Assembly: GCF_000143415.4 (NCBI RefSeq)
Contig: NW_003314263.1
Location: 347,114-411,113, forward strand
Length of the DNA: 64,000 nt
DNA from: Selaginella moellendorffii
Taxonomy: Eukaryota > Plantae > Lycopodiophyta
Reading direction: 5' to 3'
Under the pieces are notes generated by a model, which was not told the DNA's origin, did not search any database, and saw nothing but the letters and a program-made list of their open reading frames with translations. Within the stretch, counting starts at the first letter, position 1. Each line of letters starts with the position of its first letter. Shown here piece by piece: positions 1 through 42,505 of this stretch. The position numbers and the translations under genes are program-made.

Positions 1-916
1 CAATTCCAACAAATACTATTCTAGATTTTTTAGATGAAATGACATAAAAAATGAGGTTAAAAGTGGACTTACTTTAGAAATGTTAAAAATATTGATGATA
101 ATATTAATGAATGCTTCTAATTAAAATACTGTGAATTGGTGTCAAACAATTTAAATTTAGAATGTAAAGAAAGAAAGAAATCTATGTAATTTACCTTTTA
201 AATATAGTTTTTGACCCTTTTTATCAATGGAAAATTTTTTTAAACATTTTTAGATGAAAATTAGATAAAAGAATTACCTTTTATTTGAAAGTCAAACTCT
301 ATATTTTAAATTTATCCTTTACAAAAGAAGCATCAAGACCTTTTAGTCAATGATATAAAGTAACTTTTAAATAATGGGATTTAAGATGAAACTTTAAAAT
401 AATGTAATAGACAAAATTTTTAATATATTAGTGGTGTTTTTATTTTAGAATTTAAATTTAAATAAAACATTTTAGAGGGTTAAACAATTTAAATTTTAAA
501 GAATAGAAATATAATTAATTTTGCTTAAATGTCTATTTTTTGCTTTAAAGGCAATTTAAATTTATCTTTCAATTCAACCATTTTTACTTTTTCTTTTTTA
601 TAATTGAATGCTTTATAGTTGGATGATTTAAAATTCGAAATATTAGAATTGACTGGTTTGGAATTTAAAAATTTAAATTTAACAAACATACTGGCATGGA
701 AGAAACACTTAAAAATAAATAAAGATCAAGAAATATTATAGAAAAAGGCACTATTGAAGCAATGATATTGATTTATGGTTATTTCATAACATCTTGATTT
801 CTCTCTAGTTCACACTACAAAAACAAAAATTATTTTGAAGTGCTGTAAGAGAGGCATTCCAAAATGTTCCTTCCTCAAAGGCCAAAACAACTTTAATGGA
901 ATATGGGCCTAAGTTT

Positions 917-3998: not shown

Positions 3999-5615
3999 AT
4001 GGGAGCTTGGCGATCGCGGGGCTGCTCCTTCCAGCGTTTCTGGCATCGATCAGCGCACACGGAGGTAAGCAGCGTCTCGGCATTTCGTCGAGAACAGGAG
4101 GATGGAGTTCAGATTCCAGCGCTCCTCGCGGCGCTCAGGCAATGCGGTTGCTCCAGGGACCTCGGCGCTGCTAGAAAGATCCACGCATTGGCGGCCGAGA
4201 GCAAGAATCTCTCCAACGCCTTCCTCGCCAACAATCTGGCGAGCGTGTTCTTGAAATGCGGGAGCTTGGCCGATGCGAGGCTGGTGTTCGATGCGATGGA
4301 GTACCGCAATGTGGTGTCCTGGAACACTCTGATACTCGGCTACGCCACAAACAGGGAGGCCGAGAGAGCTTGGGAGCTCTTCGAAAGAATGGGATCGCAG
4401 GGATTTTCTCCGACTTCCAGGACTTACGTCGCAGTGCTTCTAGCCATCTCCGGCCTGGCAGAAGGATCGAGTGGCACTCTCGTCGATGAGAAGCTCGTCA
4501 AGCTGGGACTTCTGGAGAGAGTGCTGGTTCTACACTCCCAGGCTTGGAAGAAGAAGGATCTCTTCAATGGTTTTCTCGCCAACAGGTTGATCGATACGTA
4601 TGCCAAGTGTGGGAGCTTGCTCGACGCTCGGATGGTTTTCGACAGGATGGCCAGTCACGACGTGGTTTCATGGACTTCGATCATAGTGGCTTACGTAGAA
4701 AACGGGGAGGCAAAGTCTGGATTGGAGCTCTTTGAGAGCCTGAACATCGACCCGGATGCTCGAGTTTTTGCCGCTGCTCTCAAGGCCTGTAGCGTCCTCT
4801 CGGCTCTACAAAGTGGGAGGAAGATTCACGACGAGATTTCCAAGCGCGGCCTGTCGAGAGATGGATTTCTCTGCAACTCGCTGCTGGATTTCTACGGCAA
4901 GTGTGGGAGCATGGCTGCTGCTCTACAAGTTTTCGAGTCGATGAGCAGCGGCATGAGGAATCTAGTGACTTGGAGCACTCTGATAGCCGGGTATGGCCGC
5001 ATAGGAGACGCCGAGCGAGTAGTCCAGCTCTTCCAGAGAATGCGAGAAGAAGGGGTTCGTCCGGATGGGATCACTTTCCTGTCGCTCCTCCGAGCTTGCG
5101 GTCATGGGGGCTTCGTCGAGAAGGCCAAGGAGTTTTTCGCAGCTATGGTGTCGCAGTATGGAATTCGTGCCAGCCTTGAGCACTACCACTGCATGGTGGA
5201 TATCCTCGGCCAGGCAAACTTACTCGACGAGGCAGTGGCGATGGCCGAGAGCATGCCGTTCGAAGCAAGCCCAGTGACTTGGAACACCATTCTAGGAGCT
5301 TGCTGGAAGTGGAGAAACGTGGAAGTGGCCAAGGTGGCGTTTGAGGCGTCGTTGCGACTGGACGCTACACAGGGACTGGCTTACGTTCTGATGGCGAACG
5401 TTTACAGGAGCGTTGGAATGTGGGAAGAACACTCACAGATAATCGGCAGGAGAAACACAAGCAAACCAGGTTCTTCGTCGTCCTCTTTTTATTGTTCTTC
5501 ATTCTTAGATCTTGCTGGAGCTGACGAGAATTTTGTATCACGAAGCTGCGGTCATGACATAGAACACAAGCAAACCAGGTTCTTCGTAGTCCTCAGTTTT
5601 CTCCTTGTTTTCTAA
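3999..5615 (+). CDS. PLS-class pentatricopeptide repeat protein with E-type C-terminal motif
   Basis: Repeated KCGSLxDARxVFD / NVVSWNTLI / PDGITFLSLL motifs, then EHYHCMVDILG...MPFE...AYVLMANVY. No DYW domain seen. The 3' end is uncertain because a splice donor is probable at ~5470. Confidence 0.88.
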   Translation: MGAWRSRGCSFQRFWHRSAHTEVSSVSAFRREQEDGVQIPALLAALRQCGCSRDLGAARKIHALAAESKNLSNAFLANNLASVFLKCGSLADARLVFDAMEYRNVVSWNTLILGYATNREAERAWELFERMGSQGFSPTSRTYVAVLLAISGLAEGSSGTLVDEKLVKLGLLERVLVLHSQAWKKKDLFNGFLANRLIDTYAKCGSLLDARMVFDRMASHDVVSWTSIIVAYVENGEAKSGLELFESLNIDPDARVFAAALKACSVLSALQSGRKIHDEISKRGLSRDGFLCNSLLDFYGKCGSMAAALQVFESMSSGMRNLVTWSTLIAGYGRIGDAERVVQLFQRMREEGVRPDGITFLSLLRACGHGGFVEKAKEFFAAMVSQYGIRASLEHYHCMVDILGQANLLDEAVAMAESMPFEASPVTWNTILGACWKWRNVEVAKVAFEASLRLDATQGLAYVLMANVYRSVGMWEEHSQIIGRRNTSKPGSSSSSFYCSSFLDLAGADENFVSRSCGHDIEHKQTRFFVVLSFLLVF

Positions 5616-5800
5616 TGGTTTTCTCTCGCTGTTCATTCATAGATCTTGCTGGAGTCGTGGAAATTGACGAGAGTTGTGGATCACGAAGCTGCGGTCACTA
5701 AATAGAGCACACGCGAACCAGGTTCTTCGTCGTCCTCTTTTTTTTCCCTTGTGTTCTAATAGATCTTGCTAAACTCGTGGAAACTGACGAGAATTTTGCT
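5452..5800 (+). repeat. Three degenerate tandem copies of a ~110-145 bp donor-intron-acceptor-exon unit
   Basis: AACCAGGTTCTTCGTxGTCCTC at ~5464, ~5573 and ~5716, each followed by a T-rich tract, then TAGATCTTGCT and TGACGAGA. Confidence 0.8.
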
Positions 5801-14623: not shown

Positions 14624-15337
14624 TATAAATTTTATTGGAATTGCCCTTTAGGACAAGATACACCAATAAACTCAACTCTGCCAATGTCTTATTTAATGGG
14701 AAATACATTAAGAAGAAACCTTGATTTACGTATTTTTATTTTACAACTTTTGTAGACTGGTGTTAATTCTCAAGGTAAGGCATTAGTCGAAAATAATCAA
14801 GTAGTGAATGTACTTAGAAGATATTCTTCCAATAATTTTGACAAATAAGCCAGCACATTCTTTAATGATTTCTTTTTATCCAGAGGTTGGAATATTTGGT
14901 TTATTATACAGTGTAAAAGGTTTCTTTCCAAAATCTCCATCTAATCCTGCTAGAGTATTAACAAAAATTCCCTTTTATTGCAACCCACTAAATACAAGGC
15001 TTATAAGTGGGTATAAAAAGTTGGACAAGCATTAATTGATTATATAAAACGTTTTACAATAATAATGCAATATGATTGTAATATTATATCTTATATTAGT
15101 GTTAATGCTTTTTGGAGTACAAAAACGTATGGGAAAATTTTTGATTGTAAATTGAAATTGCAAGAAGATGGTAATCTTGTTTTATATGGTGCTTTTGATA
15201 TAACTATGTATTGGTCAAGTAAAAGTTACTGTAGAAAATATAATTGTGCTATACTGTCAGAATTTCATGTTCAGAAAGATTGTAATTTAGTCATTTATCC
15301 AAATATACTAACATGGTCAAATGGTAAAGTTTGTTAA
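14624..15337 (+). pseudogene. Frameshifted, 5'-truncated copy of the bulb-type lectin gene at 19677-20525
   Basis: ORF pieces 14808-15035 and 15065-15337 match the 282-aa protein (PIILTN..FYCNPLNTRLISGYK; QEDGNLVLY, QKDCNLVIY) but are broken by indels. Confidence 0.85.
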
Positions 15338-15950
15338 CCATAATTACAATATAGTATAATATGATTATTATATAGTGCTATTAAACAATTTTAATATTTT
15401 AAATATATTCTAGACTGATTGATATATGTTCAAACTTTCAATCTTTGATACAAGAATAAGAAACACAGTGGATATTGTTGACAATTTTCACATGGAATCT
15501 TGACTCATTATTATATAGTTATCAGTATAGATAATTTAAATATTAAATAATAATTTACTGTGTATTGTATGTAGCAACATTTGGTTTTCTTAATAGTAAT
15601 GTTATTTTTATTTATTAATTTAATTGATCAAATGCAAGTTTAAAGCTACAAACATGTATATAATTTATATACTCAAGATTAATCTTATTGCATATCAACC
15701 ATTAAATGGTAAAATAAACTAAAATATACTAGTTTAGGAAAGTTTATAAATTATAAATACAAGTTTAATCTAAATAAATAACAAATGTTAGATGTTAGAT
15801 CCCATCCAAATATATTGCCTAATTAAACTTAAAAGCAGTACTCTTTCTGGATCTTGAGTTGTGTGAGCTCCACTGGGCTGAATTTCCTCTTGTTCCTTTG
15901 CAATGGTCACTCCATTCCCTTCGTCACTCTTTCCTACGCTTTTCATACAT
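14624..15950 (+). repeat. Left arm of a large inverted repeat (partner 18825-20433)
   Basis: Colinear reverse-complement similarity read by eye: 14624-15808 vs 20433-19219, and 15843-15950 vs ~18952-18825. Confidence 0.85.
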
Positions 15951-15979
15951 CGGTTGTGCCCTATTCTTTACCACAATAT

Positions 15980-16430
15980 CGCGAGAGAAAATGCGAGGGC
16001 CTGGCAGTGATCCGCGCTTTTGAATCGATCGGCGTAGCAGCGCGAGCTCGAGAGCGAAGCTTTTTCTCGCGGGGGAGTTTGATAGCCCAATCCATCCAAA
16101 GAAACCCCTCGGGACAATCGGCGAGGAAAGGCGATCCAAGGCCAGCGCACGATGATCGCCCAGCAGGGCGAGAAGATGATCAAGAGGAAGAGGTGGCTTC
16201 GTCTCGGTCCGAGCGATGATGGCGTCGCTGAGAGACAGATCAAGCAGGAGGGTGTCACTCCACCACGCAAGAAGATAGCCGATCACGATCAGAGGTAACT
16301 TGGAGTTCTTGCGAGGTTCTTTGTGAGTTCCACGATCTCTGGAAGAACTGGTCTCTTTTTTTCTTGGGTTTCTTCCTGACAGCATGGATTCGCCTCCAGT
16401 GGCAGCGGGTGGCAGCAAAAGGTAGGAGCA
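15980..16430 (+). pseudogene. Internally deleted, inverted copy of the gene at 21284-22859
   Basis: ATG 15991 aligns to MRWPGSDPRF with a CGA->TGA nonsense change. It jumps to KQEGVTPPRKKIADHDQR and retains intron 1 and exon 2. Confidence 0.85.
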
Positions 16431-16518
16431 ATCAATGTGGAGTTTTTACCTCTCCTTTTATTGGATTTTTACCAACAATTAAGAACCCCTTTTTTAGGGT
16501 TCTTGAGTATTCACAGGA

Positions 16519-18294
16519 CTATCGCGTGGCGCATAGAAGATCCTCGCTCCACTCCTCGCTCCCGACGCAGTGGTGGCATCGGAAAATCCCCGCCGGATCG
16601 ACTCTCTTCTTGATCGCCAGCAGCCTCGTGTAATGTTCTCCAAACAGAGATTCTTGCCACTGGGGCTCACTGAAATCCGCCTCGTTCCCATACGCCCCCG
16701 ATCCGGGCGTGAGATCGATGAGCATCGCATTCGCGGCGCTCAGCTCCGCCCTGGCGCGCTGCTCGGCTCGATCGTCTCCGTCGCTCCAGCTTCTGCCGAG
16801 GATCACATGCCACAGCGCGCGGCGCCACGCGGGATTCACAGCATTGTCTCGATCGTCGCGGCTCACGGCGCCGCCCCCGACGAACACGCCAGTGAGGGAC
16901 ACGCGCGGGAAGAGCTCCCGGATGCGCACCATCACCTCGGCTAGATTCCCCGGCGAATATGCGACCGTTGTCCTTGGAATGAGCCGCGACGCCAGGAGCA
17001 GTGGAATCCCCGCGGTGGCGATGCCGGTGTTGGCGGTGTCCACATCGCGGCAGCTCGATCGCCCCTGGCATTGGATCGCCAATCGAAACTCCTGGAACGA
17101 GGGGAAGGATTGGAGGCTCCCGCTGGATCGGAGCTGGGGGTCCTCGCGCGCGAGCTCTTCCAGCGGTGCCGCGAGCGTGGCGTTGGCGAGCTCCATGCCG
17201 CGGTTTGGGAGGAGATACGAGAGCGTGAGCCCGGTGGTGTTGGTGATCGCGAAGGTCCCCGCCCAGCCGGCGCGCTCGAGCGAGGGGTGGAGCTCGGTGA
17301 ATCGAGCGAGTGTTCGCTGGAAGCTGGGCTTGTCCGGGGTTGAGAGGTTGTACTGCGCGAAGACGAGGCTGTCCAGCGCCGGGTAGAGCCTGTGCGTGGC
17401 GGTGACCGCGATGCCAAACGTTCCACCGCCGCCGCCGCGCATCGCCCAGTAGAGATCCTGGTTCTGGCAGCGATTGGCAACGACGAGGCTCCCATCCGCG
17501 GTCACCACCGAGAACTCCAGGACGTTGTCCGCGGCCAGGCCGAAAGTTGGCGAGAGTGGGCTGTGGCCTCCGCCCTGGGGATGGCCTCCGGCAGCTCCCA
17601 CCGAGCTCGATCCACCGCCGACGATCACGAACTTGCGATCAAACACCGCCTGGTAGAGCTCTTCCCACTGGACTCCAGCGCCGACCGTCACTGCCGGGAG
17701 GTACGTTGCGTCTTTCGATCGGCGAGAGCATCCTCTCGGGAGGAAGCGGTGGTGGAATCTCATGCTTTTCATTTGGTGTGTCCAGATGCTCAGCGCTCCC
17801 GCGGCGGTGCTCCGGCCGAGGTAGTCGTGACCGGTGTTCTTGACGACGAGGCGGAGGTTCCTGGCGGCCGCGAATCCCACCGCTGCTTGGATGTGGGAGG
17901 CTTTTCTCGCTGCTACTGTGTAGATTGGCACCGAGCCTTGCGAGCACGTTGAGTTTCGAGGGGAGTCTATCGAGCAGCGATCGGTGATACCGTTTGATTC
18001 CCAGTTGCTGGCTTGCATGGCTCCCGGCTGGTCCGCCCTCCAGAACGGGAAGCTCCATCGCTGGCGTGCCTCTCGGCAGGCTCGCCGATTGAAAGCTGGA
18101 TCGTGGCAAGGAGAGGCCGGAGGAACCACGCGGATGAGCTTTCCATCGATGGAGGCGTTGAAGGTGGCCCAGGATTGAGAGTCGGGCCAGCAGTGGCGAT
18201 CGAAGGCTGTGCATTGGCATGGAGGCCGGAAGGATTGAGCCAACTGGAATGCGACGATCACGATGAGGAGCAGAGGTAGCGCGGCTGTTTTCAT
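16519..18294 (-). CDS. Secreted FAD-linked oxidoreductase (VAO/BBE-like, FAD_binding_4 + BBE), fungal-type, intronless
   Basis: Signal peptide MKTAALPLLLIVIVAFQLAQS, CWPDSQSWATFN, LVVKNTGHDYLGRS, VGAAGGHPQGGGHSPLS, DLYWAMRGGGGGTFG, GAYGNEAD and DPAGIFRCHHCVGSE. Confidence 0.9.
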   Translation of the reverse strand: MKTAALPLLLIVIVAFQLAQSFRPPCQCTAFDRHCWPDSQSWATFNASIDGKLIRVVPPASPCHDPAFNRRACREARQRWSFPFWRADQPGAMQASNWESNGITDRCSIDSPRNSTCSQGSVPIYTVAARKASHIQAAVGFAAARNLRLVVKNTGHDYLGRSTAAGALSIWTHQMKSMRFHHRFLPRGCSRRSKDATYLPAVTVGAGVQWEELYQAVFDRKFVIVGGGSSSVGAAGGHPQGGGHSPLSPTFGLAADNVLEFSVVTADGSLVVANRCQNQDLYWAMRGGGGGTFGIAVTATHRLYPALDSLVFAQYNLSTPDKPSFQRTLARFTELHPSLERAGWAGTFAITNTTGLTLSYLLPNRGMELANATLAAPLEELAREDPQLRSSGSLQSFPSFQEFRLAIQCQGRSSCRDVDTANTGIATAGIPLLLASRLIPRTTVAYSPGNLAEVMVRIRELFPRVSLTGVFVGGGAVSRDDRDNAVNPAWRRALWHVILGRSWSDGDDRAEQRARAELSAANAMLIDLTPGSGAYGNEADFSEPQWQESLFGEHYTRLLAIKKRVDPAGIFRCHHCVGSEEWSEDLLCATR

Positions 18295-18824
18295 GGCTGT
18301 GTGATGTCAACGTACAACCTTTTCTTCTTTCCTGACATGAACTCGTAAAGAAATTGTAGCTATCGGAACGATAGAGCTCTTGTCAAACGCTTCGAATGAT
18401 CGACGGATGGAGCAAATGATGTGAGCACGAATTGTTTGCTCCTTTTTTTATATACTGTGGCTTTCCGCGGGGACTTGTTCTTGTGTTCATCCAGGAAAAT
18501 CTTACTCTGAGCGGCCGCCAAAAACAAAAGAACCGCACTTTGGGCTTTGACACTGGAAAACTTCTAAGGTCTGACTCTTGCTATGTGAGTGCTCTTTTTT
18601 GCGCGTTGATCAGACATTGTCAAACCTTGCCAGTTATACGTCTAGAAAATCAAAGACTGTGTTTTTTACATCTACTCTTGTTCAGAAAATCTAGATGTGA
18701 TCTTATAGACAAATTAATTCTTTTATTCTCGTTTCACTACATATTGTGGACTAGTACGTAAAAGAAGATTAGGGCACTGTCATAATTATATTCTAAATCA
18801 GTCTATGGAGGAGTTGTAGAAATA

Positions 18825-20433
18825 TGTATGGAAAGTGTAGAGGAATGATGAGGAAAGAGTGACCAAGGGAATGGAATGACCATTGCAAAGGAACAAAAGG
18901 AAATTCAGCCCAGTGGAGCTCACACAACTCCCAGTGCATCCAAGATCCAGAAAGAATTGTGCTTGAATTCCTCTCGGTCTAAGAAAGGGAAACAAAGAAA
19001 ATGGGATGGATCACTGTGGTTGCCATTCTCGGCTCAACATTTCGCTGACAAATGTCATCACTAAGCTCATGTCAAAGCAATTAAACATAAATGTAACCAG
19101 GATTTTTAATTTTTTTTATTGGATAAATTATCTTAAGACTTTAAATTTTTAAATTAATAATAATTAATATTTATAGATTTTTTTGCTTAAGGGAGAAGTG
19201 GATATACTGAGCATATGCTTGGATGTTCTAGGTCTACCATCTAACGGTTGTTATTTATTTAGATTAATTTTATATTTATAATTTATAAAGTTTCCTAGAC
19301 ACTTCCTAGTATATTTTAGCTTATTTTAAATAAGATTAATCTTGTTTTTATAAATTATAAACATTTTTATAAGTATAAACTTGCATTTGATCAATTAGAT
19401 TAATAAATATAAATAACACTATTATTTATACCAAGCATTGATGTGCAGTAGATTATTGTTTAATATTTAAATCATCTAAAATTATAAATTTATAACAATA
19501 ACATTCCACGTCAAGATTCCACGTGAATATTGTCAACAATATAAACTGTGTTTCTTATTCTTGTACCAAAGATTGAAAGTTTAAACAAATATCAATCAGT
19601 CTAGAATACATTTAAAATATTAGAAATGTTTACTATCACTATATAATACTTGTATTATACTATATTGTAATCATGGTTAACAAACTTTACCATTTGAACA
19701 TGTTAGTATATTTGGCTTTCCATCTCTATAAATGACTAAATTACAATCTTTTTGAACATGAAATTCTGATAGTACAGCACAATTATATTTTCTACAGTAA
19801 CTTTTACTTGACCAATAATTAGTTATATCAAAAGCACCATATAAAACAAGATTACCATCTTCTTGCAATCTCAATTTACAATCAAAACTTTTCCCATACG
19901 TTTTTGTACTCCAAAAAACATTAGCACTAATATAAAATACAATATTACAATCATATTGCATTATTATTGTAAAACGTTTTATATAATCAATTAATTCTTG
20001 TCCAGCTTTTAATGTTGCTAATGGCATATCTTTATACCCACTTATAAGCCTTGTATTTAGTGGGTTGCAATAAAAGGGAATTTTTGTTAATACTTCAGCA
20101 GTATTAGATGGAGATTTTGGAAAGAAACCTCTTACACTGTATAATAAACCAAATATTCCAACCTCTGGATCAAAAACAATCATTAAAAAATGTGCTGGGC
20201 TATTTGTCAAAATTATTGGAACAATATCTGCACCAGCTCTTCTCATTACTTGATTATTTTCGACTAATGCCTTAACTTGAGAATTAACACCACAGTCTAC
20301 AAAATTTGTAAAAATAAAAATACGTAAATCAATTGTTGTTAGTAATCTAGTTCTTATTAAATAAGACATTGGCAGAGTTGAGTTTATTAGTGTATATTGT
20401 CCTGAAGGAAGTGCAATTCCAATACAATTTATA
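18825..20433 (-). repeat. Right arm of the large inverted repeat (partner 14624-15950)
   Basis: Same alignment as the left arm. It carries about 260 bp (18955-19218) that is largely absent from the left arm. Confidence 0.85.
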
Positions 20434-20525
20434 AGAGCACTTACAACCATAATAGGATTTATATTTAAAAATGTTAAAGCTGTTTCGTATGCAAAATATT
20501 CAAAATATGATATATTAGTATTCAT
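19677..20525 (-). CDS. Protein with an unknown N-terminal domain and a C-terminal bulb-type (GNA-like) mannose-binding lectin domain
   Basis: Intact 282-aa ORF in very AT-rich DNA with three QxDxNxVxY motifs: QYDCNIVFY, QEDGNLVLY, QKDCNLVIY. Confidence 0.75.
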   Translation of the reverse strand: MNTNISYFEYFAYETALTFLNINPIMVVSALINCIGIALPSGQYTLINSTLPMSYLIRTRLLTTIDLRIFIFTNFVDCGVNSQVKALVENNQVMRRAGADIVPIILTNSPAHFLMIVFDPEVGIFGLLYSVRGFFPKSPSNTAEVLTKIPFYCNPLNTRLISGYKDMPLATLKAGQELIDYIKRFTIIMQYDCNIVFYISANVFWSTKTYGKSFDCKLRLQEDGNLVLYGAFDITNYWSSKSYCRKYNCAVLSEFHVQKDCNLVIYRDGKPNILTCSNGKVC

Positions 20526-21283
20526 TCTTACAAGAATTATAGAAATAACTGGTGTAAATGTTTCAGTGTGTGTGTGTGTCTATATATATTACAACTCACA
20601 ATCATTTTGAAACTGTTTCTTATAATTTCTAACTATTCATAAAGTTATAAATAGTTTATCATATTATTAGTCACTACTTACAATAACTTTTCAAGTAGCA
20701 AAAGATCTTGTTTAGCCTATATTCAAATTTCCATATCTTATTTATAATTTGAAAAGTGGACATATATCTATTAACTTATTTAACAGAAATAGTATAACTA
20801 TTATTAGACAAGATAATTAACACATGGATGGCCGAGTTTACTGACGATAGAGAACCAGTGAATCTCAATGTTGCAGAAAGAAGTAGTCCTCTCAAATGTT
20901 TTAGCACAGGTGATGGAATTCTCAGGTCTGAAGCTCAATCACTCTTTGCTATTAAAGTGAAACCTCACGAATGAACAGAATTTAGTAATTTTATTTATCA
21001 AAAAAATTTCCCTCAAGACATTGCTTCACTCGGTGATCCAAGCTGTGAAATATTTTGATCATGTGGATGCCCAGAAGATCCCTGTTTGGAGAACATTACC
21101 TGCGGCTGCTGGCGATCAAAGTCGATCCCAGGGATTTTCTGATACCGCGCGTCGGGAAAATACTCAAGAACCAACTATACATCAGAGGCAGCAAATGCTG
21201 GTAAATTCGAAAAGGTGACAAACTCTCCACTTGCAGCAGCAAATGCCCATAGAGGGCATTGCAGGGAATCTCTCGATCATACT

Positions 21284-22859
21284 TTAGCGATCGGGTGGCG
21301 GCGAGGATGGGAGAGGAGGCGGCGGCGAAGATGGTAGCGGAGGAGGAAAAGCGTCCTCCATTTCCACATCCTCATCAAACGGGGCAATCCATTCTTCACG
21401 AAAACTAGAAGAACACAAGAGAAAGAATGAAGAACTTGAGCCAAAATCTTTGCTCCTACCTTTTGCTGCCAGCCGCTGCCACTGGAGCCGAAACCATGCT
21501 GTCAGGACGAAACCCCCCCAAAAAAAGAGAAAGCAAAATCAGTTCTTCCAAAGATCGTGGAACTCGCAAAGAACCTCGCAAGAACTCAAGTTACCTCTGA
21601 TCGTGATCGGCTATCTTCTTGCGCGGTGGAGTGATACCCTCCTGCTTGATCTTCAAATACTTGTCTCTCAGCGACGCCACCATCGCTCGTCCCCTCTCGA
21701 CCTCGCCGCGGAGCAATCGAATATCTTCTCTCTGCCTGGCGATGATCACACGATCTCTATTCTCCTCCTGGATCATCGTCTGGACGCTGGCATCGCACTG
21801 CTGCTTGCGCTGGATGCTCGAGTGGACGTCCTCCGCGATCACCATCTTATCCGTGAGCACCCCCGCGTGATCCTTCTCCGCGCGATCTTGCTGCCCGAGC
21901 TTGTGATCCTCTTCCACGCGACCTTGATCTTGCTGCCCGAGCTTGTTCTTGATGATCCCAGTGAGCCACTCGCCGTGAGCAAACGTGCTCTTCCTCCTGG
22001 AGCTCGTCTTCGCGCCACGGGCGATCATCTTTCCCAGGTACTCCGCCCATCGCATCTTGATACCGAGCTTGTACGATCGATCCAGCGCGAGGAGGACCTC
22101 CACCGGCACGCAATGGAAGCACTCGCGGCGGGCGACGAGCTTCACCATAAGCATCATGCAAATCGCCTTCCACGCCTCCACATTCTCGCCAAGAACAAGG
22201 GCATCCACAGAGTAGCCGCGAGAGCTGTACTCCTTGAGATCGAGCACGATCGCGCCCAAGGCCGATCTCTCCTCCTTGGTCAGCACTGCCGAGGTCGAGA
22301 TCTCGCCACCATCGTCGCCGATCGGGAGCCTGGTGGCCGCAGAGACGCTGGCGGCATCGATCACCACGCGCTCACCTCTGACCATGGCGCTGGAGTTCCA
22401 AGGATCGAAATTTGTGAGGAACTCGTCGCAGAGGGAGCGATCGAGGGGCGGGAGGGGCTGCGCCGCGAACTCGTCCAGGCCCAGGGCGGCCAGGATCCGT
22501 CGCGCGCTGGGCTCCGCGAGGATGGGATCAAGATCCACGTCCCAGACCTTGCGGTAGACGAAGCCAGTGGGGATGGCGAACTTGGCCCCGTACCTCTTCC
22601 TCCTCTTCTTGATCATCTTCTCTCCCTGCTGCTGCTGCTGCTGCTGCTGGGCGATCATCGCGCGCTGGCCTCGGATCGCCTTGCCTCGCCGATGGAATGT
22701 CCGGAGGGTCCGGAGCTTCTGTGGATGGATTGGGCGATTCTCTGGAGCTACGATCCTCCAACACCGGGGCACATTCCTCGCGAGAAAAAGCTTCGCTCTC
22801 GAGCTCGCGCTGCTGCGCCGATCGATTCGAAAGCGCGGATCACTGCCAGGCCATCGCAT
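21284..22859 (-). CDS. Three-exon gene with a putative plant-transposon-derived domain, a coiled coil and a Pro-rich tail
   Basis: 422-aa exon 1 contains LCDEFLTNFD..MVRGERVVIDAASVSAATRLP. Two phase-compatible GT-AG introns join SMVSAPVAAAGSK and SFREEWIAPFDEDVEMEDAFPPPLPSSPPPPLPSSPPPDR*. Confidence 0.65.
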
Positions 22860-22992
22860 TTTCTCTCTCGCGGTTCACTAGCAAAGTATGTCCTTGTGTA
22901 GTACTAAAGGATAAGGTAATTAACTAATTCACGCTAACCGTACCACGCGTCCGTACGTCAAAAACTGCTAGACGAATATTCGACTATGATAA

Positions 22993-23217
22993 TTGAGGAT
23001 GAGAGTGAGAGTAGCCACCACTGCCACCATCGCCATCGTGAGAGTGAGAGTGAGTGTCTATCGTGAGAATGCCGAGTGTGAGTTATCCAACGTTGTGACC
23101 GCCATATGGTCGTGCGACTAGCGTCGTGAGAGCAGTGCCCGTGCCGCCGTGACGATCTTCCATGAGAGGAATAGCCTCCTGTCTATCCACCGTAAGGATT
23201 ATAGCCATGATCCACCA
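22993..23217 (-). pseudogene. Decayed duplicate fragments of the HUA2-like 3' (His/Gly-rich) exons
   Basis: GAGGATGAGAGTGxGAGTAGCCACC, GTGCCCGTGCCGCCGTGACGATCTTCCA, GAATAGCCTCCTGT and ATCCACCGTAAG..TAGCC.TGATCCAC match 28549-29207. Confidence 0.8.
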
Positions 23218-24829
23218 CTCTGGTGTTCCTGGCTTCTCCTGGGAGCCAACCGAGTCCGAGCAGCTCACAGCCTACGTGGAAGATTTCTTCTGGTGCTTGA
23301 TGGGCTTGATATCCATGGGGATTCGCGATCGCTCGGTGGAAAGCGAGGCAAAGCTACCCCGTGGCAAGCCAACCTCGATGGCATTCTCAACGGCCAGCCC
23401 CAGAGTGCTATCCGGGTAGAAAAACGGGCTTCCAACGTCCAGGCCACGGGAGAGATTGTCTGTCGCATTCTCGAATTTTTTAAGTTCAAGTTCTCTCGGA
23501 CCCTAGAGTGGAGACGCCCTGTTATTCTTCCTCGTCCACGCAGATGCCAATCTTGGGCAAGAGGGAGACCCACACCAATTGCCCCCCTCCTTTGCCAGCT
23601 TCCTGTTCGAGTATGACGGCTTGTGTTGCGTACAGCTTGAACCTTATTGAACTGAGCTCTACTTCCTGTGCTTGAGCATCTAGGCAGGGACCAGGTGCCT
23701 AGCGGGTATGTCGTTTCTGTTTCTTCGTATGCCAGCTTTTCTTTATCATTGTTCTTAGAATCTGTTGCTCTTCAAAAAACACCAGAGGGTGATGGTGAGG
23801 GATGCGTAAACAGCATCCATAATTGAGCGGATTACAAGAGAAATTATGGAACTGCTAAATTACACCTACAGTGGTGGTGTTCAACAGCTTGTTTCTGCTC
23901 GCTCTCCATGGCCCGATTTCTCTGCAACGTGCATGCAGCACTCACAGCGTATCTCCTTCAATGCCTTGAGGACCGACTTTGCTTCTGCGTTCCCATATCA
24001 GTGAGCGCACAAGACTTCACAAAGCCACAGTCCCATGCTACCATGGTGACCTTTTCTTCTTTCTTTCTTTCTAAAGGGGGTCACTGGGAATCCCGGCACG
24101 GTTTAAGGTTAAATCTGAGGACGAGTGCAAGAAGCTTGCTTGGGACATGCTTTGGCTGCTCTGGCTGCTCTTCACAAATTGGGCCTTGTTCAGCGTGATG
24201 TGAGGCTGGACAACATGATCTGGTCTACTGACAGGGTGTGCCGCTTATTCACTTAGAACTTGTTGCCAGGGATTAAGATGGCACAGTCACGGACTACACG
24301 TCGTTGTTAGTGCTGCTCGATCCATTGTCAACCTCCTATCATTGCTAACCGTGGTCAGCTGCTGGAGAAACTTCAATGCCGCGTCTCCACCACTGTCTAG
24401 CCAGTCCCCGCTACTGAAGAGCCCCTGGACTTTGGCAAAAGCTTCCATTGGCAAGCCACCGTTGTCTTCTATCAGCGACGGCACAGGTGCCACAGGGGAC
24501 GAAAATCCATCAGTCTCGCCAAAAAGCACCTAACAAAGAAAAGATCAATTTTGCCATGATTGGTTGAGCTTGCTTACCTCTGCTCGAAAGTCCTTGGAGA
24601 AGCGCTTCTTCCCCTTCAATGTCATCCCGGTTGAGCATCAGGATGTTGGAGCGGATGAAAGCGGTGTTAAACATGCAAAACGTTGGTGAATCAGAAGTAT
24701 GCTAAGACTTGCTTGAGAAGGTGTTAGAAAAGCTACAGCATGAGTGCAAAACATTTGTCCAAGTGCTCAAGAGCCATGGCTCAAGATGCTTTTTCATATG
24801 TGCAAAGGAAGGGGTGTGTAGGTGTCACG

Positions 24830-26260
24830 ATTAATTTCATTATAAGTTTTGGTTAAAAACACAAGAAAATTATGTCCATTACATTTCATTAGAAAATAAT
24901 ATTTATTTATTTATTATTTTAATTTATTTAAAAATTTTACAATAATTATTTTTATAAATTAATCATAAATAAATAAAAGGTAAAATTATATATTACATAT
25001 TATATAAAATTTATAAATAAAATATTGAATTAGCACATATCTAAAATAATGTCTCTCTTTGCTAACCAAATCAATATAAGCATAATATCATATTTTAGAA
25101 CAGTAAACCATGATATCTTACAATAAAGTGATAAAAAATGATACATAAATTTATAAAAAATATTTATTAATTTTAAAATTATTTAATATTAAATTTTTAT
25201 ATTGCATTTGCATATTCAATCTTTGGTGGGAAACAAAAACTATTACAAAAAATAACAACTCATTAATGGTTTACTAAATTTTTTTTACAGTTAGTACAAC
25301 AAACACAACTCTTTCTACTGGGGTAAAATGTTTCACTTGTGGAATTTGATATAATGTATATATATTTATGCAGCTAAAAATTATTGTTGATTAGTTCCTT
25401 ATGTTATATTATTTACAAAGCTTGACCGCAAAAGATCTTGCATATCAAAAATTTATAAACGTTGCAAAGATACTAGTATGCATCCAAAATGCATTAAATA
25501 AGATTTATTTGTGGAATTTATATATAATATGTATATATTTGCCATACCTTAAATTTAACTGATTTTATACCTTTCAAAAAATGTTTTGTCTCTTATAGAA
25601 TGGTGATTGTTTTTGAATATTTCAAAAAAAATATGAAAATGAAAAATATTTAAGGTGGACAAAGTCGTGGTAGTTAGCAATCGTGAATTGCAAGCGTTTA
25701 CCGATGGATCCTTTAAGCGTGGAGTTTTTGGTAGTTATGAAGTATTTATCCTAAGAGTTTTCATGCGACTCGCTTGTGGGAGAAAGACAAACTACGACCT
25801 AAAATAAATTTATTCTTGGTATGTATTGATAAATAAAAATTATTTATTGTAAACTTTATTTTTTGAAAGGTTATGGATATATTTTCTTCTTGAAAAATAA
25901 TGTCTTACCATCTCACTAATAGATTTAATTACAAATGAAATTAACATTATAGCAATTTTAGATATTTTAAAAGTGTAAATAAATAAATAAATATATATAT
26001 ATATATATATTGTAAAAATATTAAATATTTTTTATTTAAATTATTAATTATATTAATATAATTAATTTTAAGTTTTTATTTTTTTTCTATTTTTATAGCT
26101 GCAATTATGTAATTATTAAAGCTATTCTTTTAGAGAATAAAAAGCTATCTTGTATGTCTTTACTATCTTTGGAAACCCTAACTCTCATAAAAGTCTTATT
26201 TATTATCTTCATAGTATCAAACCAAATATGTAAGAATTTCTATAAACAAGTTCCAGAGTC
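24830..26260. other. Very AT-rich non-coding island (possible decayed TE)
   Basis: Abrupt composition shift, no credible ORF, (TA)n runs. Confidence 0.5.
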
Positions 26261-26424
26261 ATCCAAGTTTTTTCAAAGTAAGGCACTGTTTTTGGCAGTT
26301 GGTTGGGGTAAGATTTTCCTGGATGAACACAAGAACAAGTCCTGCTGAAACCCACCGCATATAAAAAATAACAGCGACAAGTTTTTTAAGGAAAAAGCTC
26401 TAAGTTGACACACAGCCACATACT

Positions 26425-27956
26425 TCAGCGATTGGGTAGCGGCGAGGATGGGAGAGGCGGCGGCGGTGAAGATAGGAAACGCATTCTCCATTTCCACATC
26501 CTCATCAAACGGGGCAATCCCTTCTTTACGAAAACTAGAAGAACACAAGAGAAAGAGTGAAGAAAACCCACAACTTTGATGCAAAATCTATCTTTTCTTG
26601 CCAGCCGCTGCCCACTGGACGCGAATCCATGCTGTCAGGACGAAACCCAAGAAGAAAAAAAAGAAAAAAAAACCCATCAGTCTTCCAAAGATCGTGGAAC
26701 TCGCAAGAACCTCGCCAAACTCCAAGTTACCTCTGATCGATCTTCTTGCGCTGTGGAGTGATAGCCCCTTGCTTGCTCTGCTCTTTCAGCGAGGCCACAA
26801 TCGCTCGTCCCCGCTCGACGTACCCGCGGAGCAATCGAATCTCTTCTCTCAGCTTGGCGGGCTCCCGATCTCTCCCTCCATCCTCCTGGAACGCTGGCAT
26901 CGAGCTGCTGCCTGCGCTGGATGCTCGAGTGAAGATCGCGCGGAGAAGGAGGAGGATCACGCGGGCGTGCTCACGGACAAGATGGTGATCGCCGAGGACG
27001 TCGCTGCCCAAGCTTGTGATCCTCGTCCAAGCGAACTTGATCTTGCTGTCCGAGCTTGTTCTTGATGATCCCAGTGAGCCACTCGCCGTGAGTGCTCTTC
27101 CTCTTGGGGCTCGTTTTCGCGCCGCGGGTGATCATCTTTCCCAGGTACTCCGCCCACCGCATCTTGATACCGAGCTTGCACGATCGATCCAGCGCGAGGA
27201 GCATCTCCACCGGCACGGAATGGAAGCACTCGCGGCGGGCGACGAGCTTCACCATAAGCATCATGCAAATCGCCTTCCACGCCTCCACATTTTCGCCAAG
27301 AACAAGGTCGTGGACAGAGTATCCGCGAAAGGTGTGCTCCTTGACATCGAGCATGATCCTTGACGATGAGCATCGAACATCGAACGCCCAATGCCGATCG
27401 TTCCTCCTTCGTCAGCACTGCCCCGGTGGAAGAAATCTTATCGTGCTCCAAGTCGCCGATCGGGAGCCCGGTGGCCGCAGAGACGCTGGTGGCGTCGATC
27501 ACCACGCGCTCGCCTCTGACCATGGAGCTCCGATGATCGAAGTTTGTGAAGAACTCGTCGCAGAGGGAGCGATCGAGGGGCGGGAGGGGCTGCGCCACGA
27601 ACTCGTCCAGGCCCAGGGCCTCCTGGAGCTGCCGCGCGCTGGGCTCCGCGAGAATGGGAAGATCCACGTCCCAGGAGGAAGCCAGTGGGAGTGGCGAACC
27701 TGGCCCCATTCCTGATCTTCTTCCTCTTGATCGTCTTCTTCCTCTTGATCCTGCTGGGCGATAACCGCGCGCTTGCCTTGGATCGCCTTGCTCCGCCGCT
27801 GAATGTCCGGAGCTTCTTTGGATGCTTTGGATGGATTGGGCGAGCTACGATAGCAAGCTCCTCCAACACCGGGGCACATTCCTCGTGAGAAAAAGTTTCG
27901 GTCGCGAGCTCGCGCTGCTGCGCCGATCGATTTCTATAGCGTGGATCACCTCCCAC
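26425..27956 (-). pseudogene. Frameshifted second full-length copy of the 21284-22859 gene
   Basis: Homologous peptides are split over four frames (27438-27956, 26957-27709, 26971-27354, 26727-27011). Both introns and the last exons are retained. Confidence 0.85.
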
Positions 27957-28282: not shown

Positions 28283-28382
28283 NNNNNNNNNNNNNNNNNN
28301 NNNNNNNNNNNNNNNNNNNNNNNNNNNNNNNNNNNNNNNNNNNNNNNNNNNNNNNNNNNNNNNNNNNNNNNNNNNNNNNNNN
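28283..28382. other. Assembly gap (100 N) next to a poly-T run
   Basis: N run in the sequence. Confidence 0.99.
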
Positions 28383-37876: not shown

Positions 37877-38026
37877 TATCTTCTTCGTGCTCTCCCAGAT
37901 TGCATACTCGGAGCCCGCCATTACGAGCTTTTAAGGGGATGATTTTGGAAGCAAAGGTCATGTCAAATGAGATCTTGCCTGAACAGATGGATTTTTACCT
38001 TGGACCAAGCTTCAAAATGAGTCGAT
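37877..38026 (-). pseudogene. Partial duplicate of the last two alpha-amylase exons and their intron
   Basis: ATCTTCTTCGTGCTCTCCCAGATTGCATACTCGGAGCCCGCCATTACGAGCTT...TTTACCTTGGACCAAGCTTCA matches 38619-38801. Confidence 0.85.
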
Positions 38027-38347
38027 GCGGAGTTTGGATAGTTTCAAGAGTCTAGAGACTTCTTTGACAACACAATCTCCATGAATTTCCAGCTCTTGCG
38101 AGCCATTGCACCTGAGCTGTGGTGAGCACAATCGAATTCCTTTCTCAGAATCAGGGCAGGCCAATGAAGTTCACGAGGAATTTGGCAGCAGCACCACAGT
38201 TGTAGAGGTCCTTTAAATCTTCCTCAAGCTTGCTTAGAATAAGCGCCATTTTGAAAAAAAACCTAATAACTTTTGATTCTTCTTCAATAACATGTTAGAT
38301 TGTAAGCCTAAACATTGAAACTTATTGGAATAGCAAAATATACAAAG

Positions 38348-42239: not shown

Positions 42240-42505
42240 AAATCAAAATCAAAGTTCTTCCAAGAAACCAAGAAGTTTTTGTTAGTTTTCTTCGTTGATT
42301 GTTTCGAGGCTCCAATTCTTAGCACTGTAAAAATCAAAATCAAAGTTCTTCCTTGCTGGTTCTTACGAAGTTCTTCCAAGAAACCAAGAAGTTCTTGTTA
42401 GTTTTCTTCGTTGATTTTTTCGAGGCTCCAAATCTTAGCACTAAAGAAATTAAAAAGTTCTGGAAGTGTTGGAAGTTCTCGTGGGTAGTTTTCATCGTTG
42501 ATTCA
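42208..42505 (+). repeat. Three-copy ~90-120 bp tandem repeat spanning the lipase stop codon
   Basis: TTTCGAGGCTCCAAxTCTTAGCACT at ~42211, ~42302 and ~42418, followed by AAGAAACCAAGAAGTT..TGTTAGTTTTCTTCGTTGATT in the first two units. Confidence 0.85.

What the first reader, a model, noticed from the sequence alone, without database searches (positions are those of the whole stretch)
14624..20525. Inverted-repeat cassette: a fungal-type secreted flavin oxidase bracketed by two head-in lectin arms
Seen in sequence: two AT-rich arms of about 1.3 and 1.6 kb (14624-15950 and 18825-20433) are diverged reverse complements. Each carries a GNA-type lectin gene pointing inward. They enclose a ~2.9 kb GC-rich spacer with an intact secreted FAD oxidoreductase and a broken transposon-domain gene. 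The block interrupts a run of ordinary housekeeping genes. Established: GNA lectins bind mannose and many are anti-insect, and BBE-like oxidases can generate H2O2 or tailor specialised metabolites. Inference: this may be an accessory defence cassette assembled or moved by a foldback/Pack-type element, and read-through transcription of the arms could produce hairpin siRNAs that regulate the lectin.
Basis: partly seen in the sequence, partly recalled or inferred. Interest (0 to 1): 0.75.

Follow-up and report, generated by a model that had tools for sequence, protein, structure and literature searches.

The report
Inverted duplicate lectin genes flanking oxidase
In a spikemoss (Selaginella moellendorffii) gene cluster, a lectin gene and a decayed copy of it lie in opposite directions on either side of a flavin oxidase gene; this looks like ordinary local duplication and gene loss, not a mobile cassette.

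Summary
The inverted repeat is real. 14624-15950 pairs with the reverse complement of 18825-20433 at 90% identity over about 1.3 kb. Only the right arm holds an intact gene: a 282-codon, very AT-rich ORF (GC3 11%) with an orphan N-terminal domain and a snowdrop-type (GNA) lectin domain. The left copy lacks the first ~30 codons and is frameshifted, so it is a pseudogene.

The spacer holds an intact FAD_binding_4 + BBE oxidase, identical to an annotated S. moellendorffii gene, from a Selaginella family whose nearest other relatives are fungal. The "transposon-domain" gene is a deleted copy of a Selaginella-only orphan gene with no transposon domain.

A second inverted block (15983-16651 versus 22867-21078), an oxidase C-terminal relic at 21073-21129 and a third orphan-gene copy at 26.4-27.9 kb show a wider nest of duplications. 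Decay is reciprocal: the left unit keeps the oxidase, and the right unit keeps the lectin and the orphan gene.

I found no target-site duplication. The repeat's right outer end lies inside the lectin ORF, so a foldback or Pack-type element is not supported. The hairpin-siRNA idea is untested.

The scan had already reported this AT-rich lectin family and the fungal-type oxidase family on other pieces of this genome.

The parts
14624..15950 (+). Left arm. It holds a 5'-truncated, frameshifted pseudogene copy of the lectin (coding remains about 14624-15337), an AT-rich 3' flank, and a GC-normal inner segment 'M' (15833-15950).
   Evidence: Alignment to the right arm gives 90.3% identity with six deletions in the coding part. 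tblastn of the lectin protein matches 14645-15334. Three-frame translation shows the reading frame is broken.
15983..16431 (+). Internally deleted copy of the orphan 422-aa gene. Residues 1-87 and 391-422 are kept and about 300 codons are lost.
   Evidence: blastn gives 90-96% identity to the reverse complement of 22867-22776 and 21652-21450. tblastn confirms the match.
16519..18294 (-). Intact, intronless 591-aa FAD_binding_4 + BBE oxidase with a signal-peptide-like N-terminus. It matches the S. moellendorffii model SELMODRAFT_230086.
   Evidence: Pfam E-values are 5.5e-18 and 7.1e-11, both above the curated cut-offs. P0281 is 100% identical, and P0003 is identical apart from a 55-residue stretch that its model leaves out. 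Relatives are listed and the tree is.
18444..18526 (+). Oxidase upstream segment that recurs, inverted, next to the third orphan-gene copy at 26287-26368.
   Evidence: blastn gives 84% identity over 83 nt.
18825..20433 (-). Right arm. It holds GC-normal inner segment M' (18825-18964), an AT-rich 3' flank with about 250 nt absent from the left arm, and most of the intact lectin gene.
19677..20525 (-). Intact 282-codon ORF with GC 27% and GC3 11%. Residues about 170-282 form a GNA/bulb-type lectin domain with three QxDxNxVxY motifs. Residues about 26-169 form an orphan domain. Met26 followed by a hydrophobic run is a possible true start with a signal peptide (inference).
   Evidence: phmmer against the PDB gives 1dlp at E 6.6e-13 and 30 further GNA-type lectin sequences at E <= 1.1e-5. 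The big search found 3085 hits; in all 150 listed the best match lies within residues 150-282. The longest stop-free run is 300 codons, against 69 on average and 142 at most in 1000 shuffles. There is no self-hit in the protein collection, so the ORF is unannotated.
21073..21129 (+). Relic of the C-terminus (residues 547-567, BBE domain) of a second oxidase copy, in the opposite direction to the intact one.
   Evidence: tblastn gives 76% identity over 21 aa at E 0.002. The DNA inverted repeat 16610-16651 / 21078-21119 is 90% complementary.
21329..24625 (-). Orphan gene, copy 1: the 422-aa ORF at 21591-22859, which is the main exon of model SELMODRAFT_404053 (678 aa). It is the right-hand partner of the second inverted block (21078-22867).
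   Evidence: tblastn of P0280 places its exons at 24625-24350, 23921-23577, 23466-23098, 22748-21462 and 21400-21329. Only Selaginella relatives on the same scaffold were found. No credible Pfam match was found.
26419..27949 (-). Orphan gene, copy 2 (SELMODRAFT_404054). It is a direct repeat of copy 1 at about 80% identity and is decayed.
   Evidence: blastn of 21278-22843 against 26419-27949 gives 80.5% identity. P0124 is 100% identical to 27709-26975.

Best explanation
This is a small birth-and-death gene cluster in gene-rich Selaginella moellendorffii DNA, not a mobile cassette. A local unit of three unrelated genes was copied at least twice, once in inverted orientation. The three genes are an AT-coded secreted 'orphan domain + GNA lectin', a fungal-type BBE-like FAD oxidase, and a Selaginella-only orphan gene.

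The copies then decayed reciprocally. The left unit keeps the oxidase but has a truncated, frameshifted lectin and an internally deleted orphan gene. The right unit keeps the lectin and the orphan gene but has only a 21-residue relic of its oxidase. A third unit keeps only a decayed orphan gene and a piece of oxidase upstream sequence.

The 'cassette' of the finding is the part of this nest where the two lectin copies happen to flank the surviving oxidase.

Shown: the repeats, the broken and intact states of each copy, the domain identities, and that AT-richness predates the duplication.

Inferred: the order of events (template switching or inversion within a former tandem array), secretion of the proteins, and that the arrangement itself has no function.
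For: - Inverted block A (14624-15950 versus 20433-18825) and inverted block B (15983-16651 versus 22867-21078) have similar divergence of 90-96%.
- An oxidase C-terminal relic lies at 21073-21129, on the strand opposite to the intact oxidase.
- A direct repeat joins 21278-22843 and 26419-27949. An inverted copy of oxidase upstream sequence lies at 26287-26368.
- The left lectin lacks codons 1-30 and has six deletions, five of them not multiples of three.
- The arm substitution spectrum is 65 transitions to 60 transversions with no direction. The AT-richness is therefore older than the duplication and is not RIP-like.
- No target-site duplication was found. No TE domain was found.
- The orphan gene has relatives only on the same scaffold.
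- A second locus on the same 4.46-Mb scaffold again joins orphan gene, oxidase and the arm's inner segment M. Its models are SELMODRAFT_404364, 404365 and 230122.
- The flanks are ordinary genes.
Against: - The gene order in the two units is a cyclic permutation, not a clean palindrome. One duplication event therefore cannot explain it, and the history is not resolved.
- Differences between the lectin copies are 46 nonsynonymous to 3 synonymous. Simulation expects 10.3 synonymous, and P(3 or fewer) = 0.004. No aligned stop codon is present. The left copy may therefore have been functional, and perhaps under diversifying selection, before it broke. A purely neutral picture does not predict this.
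- I could not read the rest of the genome, so I could not count how often lectin and oxidase genes are neighbours elsewhere.
Confidence: 0.72

Rival explanations
1. The inverted arms act as a natural hairpin locus. A transcript starting at the right lectin gene reads on through the oxidase, which is on the same strand, into the left arm and folds back. Dicer then makes siRNAs that down-regulate the lectin and perhaps its paralogs. Known examples of this kind are the Arabidopsis PAI1-PAI4 and soybean CHS inverted repeats (from my own knowledge).
For: The arms share 15 perfect runs of 21 nt or more, 62 nt at the longest, and 12 of them lie inside the lectin ORF. Lectin and oxidase are co-oriented on the minus strand. 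The coding part of the arms is better conserved (93.0%) than the AT-rich 3' flank (85.5%).
Against: The transcript would have to run about 5.9 kb through the lectin 3' flank, which contains two AATAAA signals, and through a whole second gene. No expression or small-RNA data could be consulted. S. moellendorffii shows no prominent 24-nt siRNA peak (PMC5569507). Better conservation of the coding part is also expected from ordinary protein-level constraint.
Confidence: 0.1
2. The block was assembled or moved by a transposon (foldback, Pack-MULE-like or Helitron-like gene capture), with the arms serving as its terminal inverted repeats.
For: There are long inverted arms. The arms are AT-rich like the repeat compartment of this genome, according to earlier scan notes. 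The block sits among unrelated housekeeping genes.
Against: The best shared flank word is an 8-mer lying 33 and 21 nt away from the ends, and 8% of shuffles do as well. The right outer end falls within the lectin ORF. No transposase or TE domain was found. The orphan-gene fragments are local copies only. A second inverted block in permuted order does not fit one element.
Confidence: 0.07
3. The left arm is an assembly artefact, such as a misplaced haplotype or a collapsed repeat.
For: The S. moellendorffii assembly holds two haplotypes. A near-identical locus (oxidase 98%, orphan gene 96%) exists on the same scaffold. A 100-N gap lies at 28283-28382.
Against: The arms differ by about 10% and by 16 indels, far more than the 98% level seen for the near-identical locus. 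There is no gap within 14-21 kb. The left arm is joined to unique sequence on both sides.
Confidence: 0.03

Closest known systems
Birth-and-death gene clusters with local inverted or tandem segmental duplication and reciprocal gene loss, as in plant defence-gene and lectin clusters
   Same: Several diverged copies of the same few genes lie within about 15 kb in both orientations. Each gene type keeps one intact copy, and pseudogenes and relics remain. The block is embedded among conserved single-copy genes.
   Different: The duplicated unit mixes three unrelated genes of very different base composition (GC3 11% against 76-78%). The gene order is cyclically permuted between the units.
GNA-related (bulb-type, beta-prism II) mannose-binding lectins, e.g. 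Galanthus nivalis agglutinin (1msa/1jpc) and Scilla lectin (1dlp)
   Same: The C-terminal ~113 residues align to these structures at E down to 6.6e-13. They keep all three QxDxNxVxY motifs and the conserved cysteine pair positions (sequence read directly).
   Different: The domain is fused behind a ~145-residue domain with no detectable relatives. It is encoded in extremely AT-rich codons and scores below Pfam's B_lectin cut-off (17-20 bits against 32.4). Sugar binding is untested.
Fungal-type BBE-like / VAO-family FAD-linked oxidoreductases ('ARB_02478-like')
   Same: FAD_binding_4 and BBE domains are both above their cut-offs, and the N-terminus looks like a signal peptide. The nearest non-Selaginella relatives are Mucoromycota, Basidiomycota and truffle proteins, bdelloid rotifers and ferns, at 37-47% identity.
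   Different: The window's copy sits in a clade of nine Selaginella paralogs (SH-aLRT 99) out of twelve sampled, so the family has been resident for a long time. Substrate and product are unknown.
Natural inverted-repeat silencer loci (Arabidopsis PAI1-PAI4, soybean CHS I locus, maize Mu killer); recalled from my own knowledge, not read here
   Same: An inverted partial duplicate of a gene lies close to the intact copy, with long perfect matches between them.
   Different: The arms are 2.9 kb apart with a whole gene between them and are 10% diverged. No read-through transcript or small RNA has been shown.
Foldback and Pack-type (gene-capturing) DNA transposons
   Same: Long inverted arms enclose host gene sequence.
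   Different: There is no target-site duplication, no defined termini (one end lies inside an ORF), no transposase-related sequence, and no evidence of further copies.

Membership tests
GNA / bulb-type lectin (Pfam B_lectin PF01453) | Significant sequence similarity to solved GNA-type lectins | tested here: met
   phmmer against the PDB gives 1dlp at E 6.6e-13, 3a0c at 7e-12, and 1xd6, 1jpc, 1msa and others, all on residues 170-274. The big search found 3085 hits, all of the listed ones on this domain.
GNA / bulb-type lectin (Pfam B_lectin PF01453) | Three QxDxNxVxY mannose-binding motifs | tested here: met
   Read directly in the ORF translation: QYDCNIVFY, QEDGNLVLY and QKDCNLVIY. The left copy has QYDCNIISY in the first motif.
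GNA / bulb-type lectin (Pfam B_lectin PF01453) | Score at or above Pfam's gathering threshold (32.4 bits) | tested here: not met
   The domain alone scores 17.1 bits. The left fragment scores 20.3 bits. The full ORF gets no match at E <= 0.01.
GNA / bulb-type lectin (Pfam B_lectin PF01453) | Beta-prism II fold | tested here: inconclusive
   The single-sequence AlphaFold2 model has mean pLDDT 32 and cannot be used.
Selaginella 'orphan domain + GNA lectin' AT-rich family (earlier notes of this scan) | Intronless AT-rich ORF with an unknown N-terminal domain and a C-terminal GNA domain, related to other Selaginella copies | tested here: met
   GC3 is 11%. The N-terminal domain has no relative in two protein searches, Pfam or the Atlas. 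The lectin domain, and in P0144 also the stretch just before it, is 45-59% identical to annotated Selaginella lectin fragments on several scaffolds. The paralogs' N-terminal domains could not be fetched for comparison.
BBE-like / VAO-type FAD-linked oxidase | FAD_binding_4 (PCMH-type) domain plus a C-terminal BBE domain, both above the curated cut-offs | tested here: met
   The scores are 65.5 bits (cut-off 26.4) and 42.4 bits (cut-off 20.6).
BBE-like / VAO-type FAD-linked oxidase | Oxidase activity and covalent flavin | not testable with these tools
   A GGGHS stretch lies where this family carries the flavin-linking histidine (my own knowledge of the family).
Foldback / Pack-type transposon | Target-site duplication flanking the outer ends of the arms | tested here: not met
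   The best shared word is an 8-mer lying 33 and 21 nt from the ends, and 8% of shuffles give a word as long.
Foldback / Pack-type transposon | Arms end at element termini, and transposase-related or family-specific terminal sequence is present | tested here: not met
   The right outer end lies at about codon 31 of the lectin ORF. No TE domain was found in any ORF of the block.
Foldback / Pack-type transposon | Further copies elsewhere in the genome | not testable with these tools
Hairpin (inverted-repeat) siRNA locus | Inverted arms with perfect matches of 21 nt or more to the target gene | tested here: met
   There are 15 such runs, 12 of them in the lectin ORF, and the longest is 62 nt.
Hairpin (inverted-repeat) siRNA locus | A single transcript through both arms, and small RNAs from them | not testable with these tools
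   No RNA-seq or small-RNA data were available.
RIP-like or deamination-driven decay of duplicated DNA | Differences between the copies dominated by C-to-T and G-to-A transitions | tested here: not met
   There are 65 transitions and 60 transversions. GC-to-AT transitions number 37 and AT-to-GC transitions 28, read from the right arm to the left.

The most novel reading that the evidence does not exclude
The co-duplicated trio is a functional defence module kept together by selection. It comprises the AT-coded secreted two-domain GNA lectin, the fungal-type secreted flavin oxidase, and the Selaginella-only orphan gene. In this reading the decayed inverted lectin copy has been retained as a hairpin arm that tunes lectin expression through 21-22-nt siRNAs. 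The excess of amino-acid changes between the two lectin copies (46 nonsynonymous to 3 synonymous) would then reflect diversifying selection on a pathogen- or herbivore-facing protein.
Probability: 0.06. Interest if true: 0.6.

Novelty: new member of a known kind. Interest (0 to 1): 0.3.

Why it matters
As read here, the arrangement is an ordinary product of local duplication, inversion and gene loss. Its main value is as a clean worked example. It shows one more intact, unannotated member of the AT-coded Selaginella 'orphan domain + GNA lectin' family, this time in a small AT island within GC-rich, gene-dense DNA. The extreme AT composition therefore travels with the gene and its flanks and is not imposed by a large regional compartment. 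The arm comparison also shows that this composition predates a duplication now about 10% diverged. If small-RNA data showed the arms to be a hairpin source, it would be a rare natural inverted-repeat regulator of a lectin in a lycophyte.

Tried and rejected
- RIP-like mutation of the duplicated arms: rejected, because transitions and transversions are about equal and show no direction.
- Other AT-rich blocks of the window (1-900, 24751-26300) as further lectin copies: rejected. They give only 58-67% matches in both orientations, which reflects composition, and no tblastn hit.
- Giant-virus or organelle origin of the AT island: not supported. The closest lectin-domain relatives I identified are Selaginella's own genes at 45-59% identity. 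The giant-virus paper on Selaginella never uses the word lectin.
- Transposon identity of the 422-aa ORF: rejected.
- Structure of the lectin's N-terminal domain: the single-sequence AlphaFold2 model failed with pLDDT 32. Both ESM Atlas searches were blank, and no homologues were available to build an alignment.
- Rfam scan of the window: no match.
- The bacterial-type promoter and terminator scan is not meaningful for a plant and was ignored.
I therefore could not fetch the second locus, the other haplotype or the paralogous lectin loci.
- The search of earlier findings by sequence gave blanks, which mean nothing.
- The oxidase tree (quick method, midpoint root) leaves the deep branching among the Selaginella, fern, fungal and rotifer groups unresolved and cannot decide on horizontal transfer.
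Full report
**Observation.** A self-comparison of 13-22 kb finds a chain of inverted matches. They pair 14645-15935 with 18851-20408 at 87-96% per segment. A gapped alignment extends the pairing to 14624-15950 against the reverse complement of 18825-20433. That alignment has 1170 matches, 125 mismatches (90.3% identity) and 16 indels, and the BLAST E-value is 0. Both arms are AT-rich (22-30% GC), whereas the spacer reaches 64-67% GC. The stated coordinates and the claim of diverged reverse complements are therefore correct and far beyond chance.

**Organism.** The spacer ORF 16519-18294 (minus strand, 591 aa) is 100% identical to a protein in the public collection (P0281). It is also identical to the Selaginella moellendorffii model SELMODRAFT_230086, apart from a 55-residue stretch that the model leaves out. 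The window is therefore S. moellendorffii nuclear DNA. The flanking ORFs are ordinary plant genes:
- Left side: DEAD-box helicase, PPR protein, Pumilio-type NABP and a short-chain dehydrogenase.
- Right side: SET-domain protein, class 3 lipase, LEA_2, TCP, PPR and UBR-box proteins.

**The lectin gene.**
- The right arm holds an intact 282-codon ORF (19677-20525, minus strand).
- In this 26% GC block the longest stop-free run is 300 codons. In 1000 shuffles the mean was 69 and the maximum 142. The ORF is therefore maintained, not accidental.
- Its GC3 is 11%, against 76% for the oxidase and 78% for the orphan gene next door.
- Residues about 170-282 match solved GNA-type lectins, with 1dlp at E 6.6e-13 and many others.
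- These residues carry three complete QxDxNxVxY motifs, read directly from the translation.
- Pfam's B_lectin model scores only 17-20 bits, below its 32.4-bit cut-off.
- The first ~170 residues have no relative. The word search found one protein, and only over the lectin domain.
- The exhaustive HMMER search found 3085 proteins. In all of the 150 listed, the best match lies within residues 150-282. Pfam and the ESM Atlas were blank.
- The closest lectin-domain relatives I identified are short, partial S. moellendorffii gene models on several scaffolds, at 45-59% identity. Among them are SELMODRAFT_94634, 19151, 29137, 79266 and 19046. One of them also shares the stretch just before the lectin domain.
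- The ORF itself is absent from the collection, so it is unannotated.
- This matches a family that earlier notes of this scan describe on other pieces of the genome: AT-rich, intronless, 'unknown domain + GNA lectin'. I used those notes as a lead and checked only the features listed above.
- A hydrophobic run after Met26 could be a signal peptide. That is inference.

**The left copy.**
- Homology to the right arm starts at about codon 31 of the ORF, inside that hydrophobic run. The left copy therefore lacks the start codon and the promoter.
- Within the coding part it has deletions of 4, 1, 2, 2, 22 and 12 nt. The reading frame jumps between frames. It is a pseudogene.
- At most, a 90-aa ORF (15065-15337) covering an N-terminally clipped lectin domain remains.

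**Divergence between the copies.**
- The coding part is 93.0% identical, and the GC-normal inner segment is 93%. Both are better conserved than the AT-rich 3' flank at 85.5%.
- Of 49 coding differences, 46 are nonsynonymous and 27 fall on codon position 2. None creates a stop codon.
- A simulation using the flank's own substitution spectrum expects 10.3 synonymous changes. The probability of three or fewer is 0.004.
- This suggests that the left copy coded for protein for a while and that the pair diverged under amino-acid-changing selection.
- The sample is small, and some differences sit next to indels, where the alignment is uncertain.

**Substitution spectrum.** The arms differ by 65 transitions and 60 transversions with no direction. 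The AT-richness therefore existed before the duplication. It is not a RIP-like consequence of being repeated.

**The spacer.**
- The oxidase has FAD_binding_4 and BBE domains above their cut-offs.
- In my quick tree it sits in a clade of nine Selaginella paralogs (SH-aLRT 99) out of twelve sampled.
- Beyond Selaginella, its nearest relatives are fungal (Calcarisporiella, Mortierella, Basidiobolus, Ganoderma, Tuber), bdelloid rotifer and fern proteins, at 37-47% identity. No seed-plant BBE-like protein appears among the best 120 hits.
- 'Fungal-type' is therefore fair. However, the quick midpoint-rooted tree leaves the deep branches unresolved, and the family is old in this lineage. Other notes of the scan reach the same view.
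- The 'broken transposon-domain gene' (15983-16431) is an internally deleted copy of the 422-aa ORF at 21591-22859. It keeps residues 1-87 and 391-422.
- That ORF is the main exon of model SELMODRAFT_404053.
- It has only three relatives among 5.8 billion proteins, all on the same Selaginella scaffold.
- It has no credible Pfam match at permissive thresholds. I found nothing that ties it to a transposon.

**Wider structure.** The arms are not the only repeat.
- A second inverted block pairs 15983-16651 with 22867-21078, with about 1 kb deleted on the left.
- At its end lies a relic of the last residues of a second oxidase (21073-21129, plus strand, 76% identity over 21 aa).
- A direct repeat joins 21278-22843 to 26419-27949 at 80% identity. 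The second copy is the orphan gene model SELMODRAFT_404054.
- A piece of the oxidase's upstream region (18444-18526) recurs, inverted, at 26287-26368.

With M as the GC-normal inner arm segment, the gene orders are:
- Left unit, read on the minus strand: oxidase, orphan gene (deleted), M, lectin pseudogene.
- Right unit, read on the plus strand: M, lectin, oxidase relic, orphan gene.
- A third unit follows, with an AT-rich block, the oxidase-upstream relic and the orphan gene.

The two orders are cyclic permutations of one four-part unit. This is what a former tandem array, or a multi-step template-switching event, would give. A single foldback insertion would not. Each gene type survives intact exactly once.

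A second locus on the same 4.46-Mb scaffold again combines these parts. It carries SELMODRAFT_404364 (orphan gene, 96%), 230122 (oxidase, 98%) and 404365 (an 86% oxidase fragment whose model runs into an M-like tail). I could not fetch its DNA.

**Tests of the mobile-element reading.**
- The outer flanks share no target-site duplication. The best shared word is an 8-mer lying 33 and 21 nt away from the ends, and 8% of shuffles do as well.
- The right outer end lies inside the ORF.
- No TE-related domain is present.
- The other AT-rich blocks in the window are not related to the arms.

I therefore reject a foldback or Pack-type element as the best explanation, at about 0.07.

**Test of the hairpin reading.**
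- It is physically possible. Fifteen perfect runs of 21 nt or more remain, 12 of them in the ORF.
- Lectin and oxidase lie on the same strand, so read-through from the lectin would reach the left arm in antisense.
- That transcript would have to pass two AATAAA signals in the lectin's 3' flank and a complete gene.
- I had no RNA data.
- S. moellendorffii lacks a prominent 24-nt siRNA class (PMC5569507). This does not exclude 21-22-nt hairpin siRNAs.

**Assembly artefact.** This is unlikely. The arms differ by about 10% and by many indels, and there is no gap within 14-21 kb. The only N run is at 28283-28382.

**Verdict.** The best explanation is a local birth-and-death cluster with inverted and direct segmental duplications and reciprocal decay (confidence about 0.72). 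The lectin family and the oxidase family were already reported by this scan on other DNA of this genome. The inverted arrangement is the only new element, and it is of a known kind.

**Limits.**
Genome-wide linkage and comparison with the other haplotype could not be done.
The only multi-exon protein used (P0280) came from the database.

Noticed in passing
window 21329-24625, 26276-27709 and 15983-16431: A Selaginella-only orphan gene family (models SELMODRAFT_404053 and 404054, plus 404364 and 404362 elsewhere on the scaffold). It has no credible Pfam match, and its only relatives lie on one 4.46-Mb scaffold. There are three copies in this window, in different states of decay.
   Followed up: partly
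window 14624-15337 versus 19680-20433: Between the two lectin copies there are 46 nonsynonymous and 3 synonymous differences, with 27 of 49 at codon position 2 and no aligned stop codon. Synonymous sites have diverged about 2%, whereas the adjacent non-coding flank has diverged about 14%. The cause could be diversifying selection or constraint on synonymous or AT-rich sites.
   Followed up: partly
window 19677-20525 versus 16519-18294 and 21591-22859: Neighbouring genes less than 1.5 kb apart differ in GC3 by 11% against 76-78%. The AT island (18951-20900) has sharp edges within gene-dense DNA.
   Followed up: partly
protein P0007 (SELMODRAFT_404365), not in the window: A public gene model joins an 86%-identical oxidase fragment to a tail that matches the arms' inner segment (15869-15949 at 83%, 18816-18953 at 64%). 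The model is probably chimaeric, but it shows that oxidase and this segment are adjacent at a second locus.
   Followed up: partly
window 1-900 and 24751-26300: Two further AT-rich blocks (22% GC) have no ORF longer than about 65 codons lying wholly inside them. They resemble the lectin arms and each other only through base composition.
   Followed up: yes
window 28283-28382: A run of 100 N (a scaffold gap) lies just after the third orphan-gene copy. The right-hand end of the duplicated region is therefore not fully assembled.
   Followed up: no
window 42161-42455, 5522-5747 and 37878-38700: Short local direct repeats of 83-88 nt occur in two or three copies at 66-95% identity, in or near other genes. 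They were not examined.
   Followed up: no
window 16709-17386, 17392-17952 and 21450-22901 (plus strand): Long ORFs run antisense to the GC-rich oxidase and orphan genes. This is expected from the low stop-codon frequency in GC-rich DNA, and they are probably not genes.
   Followed up: no
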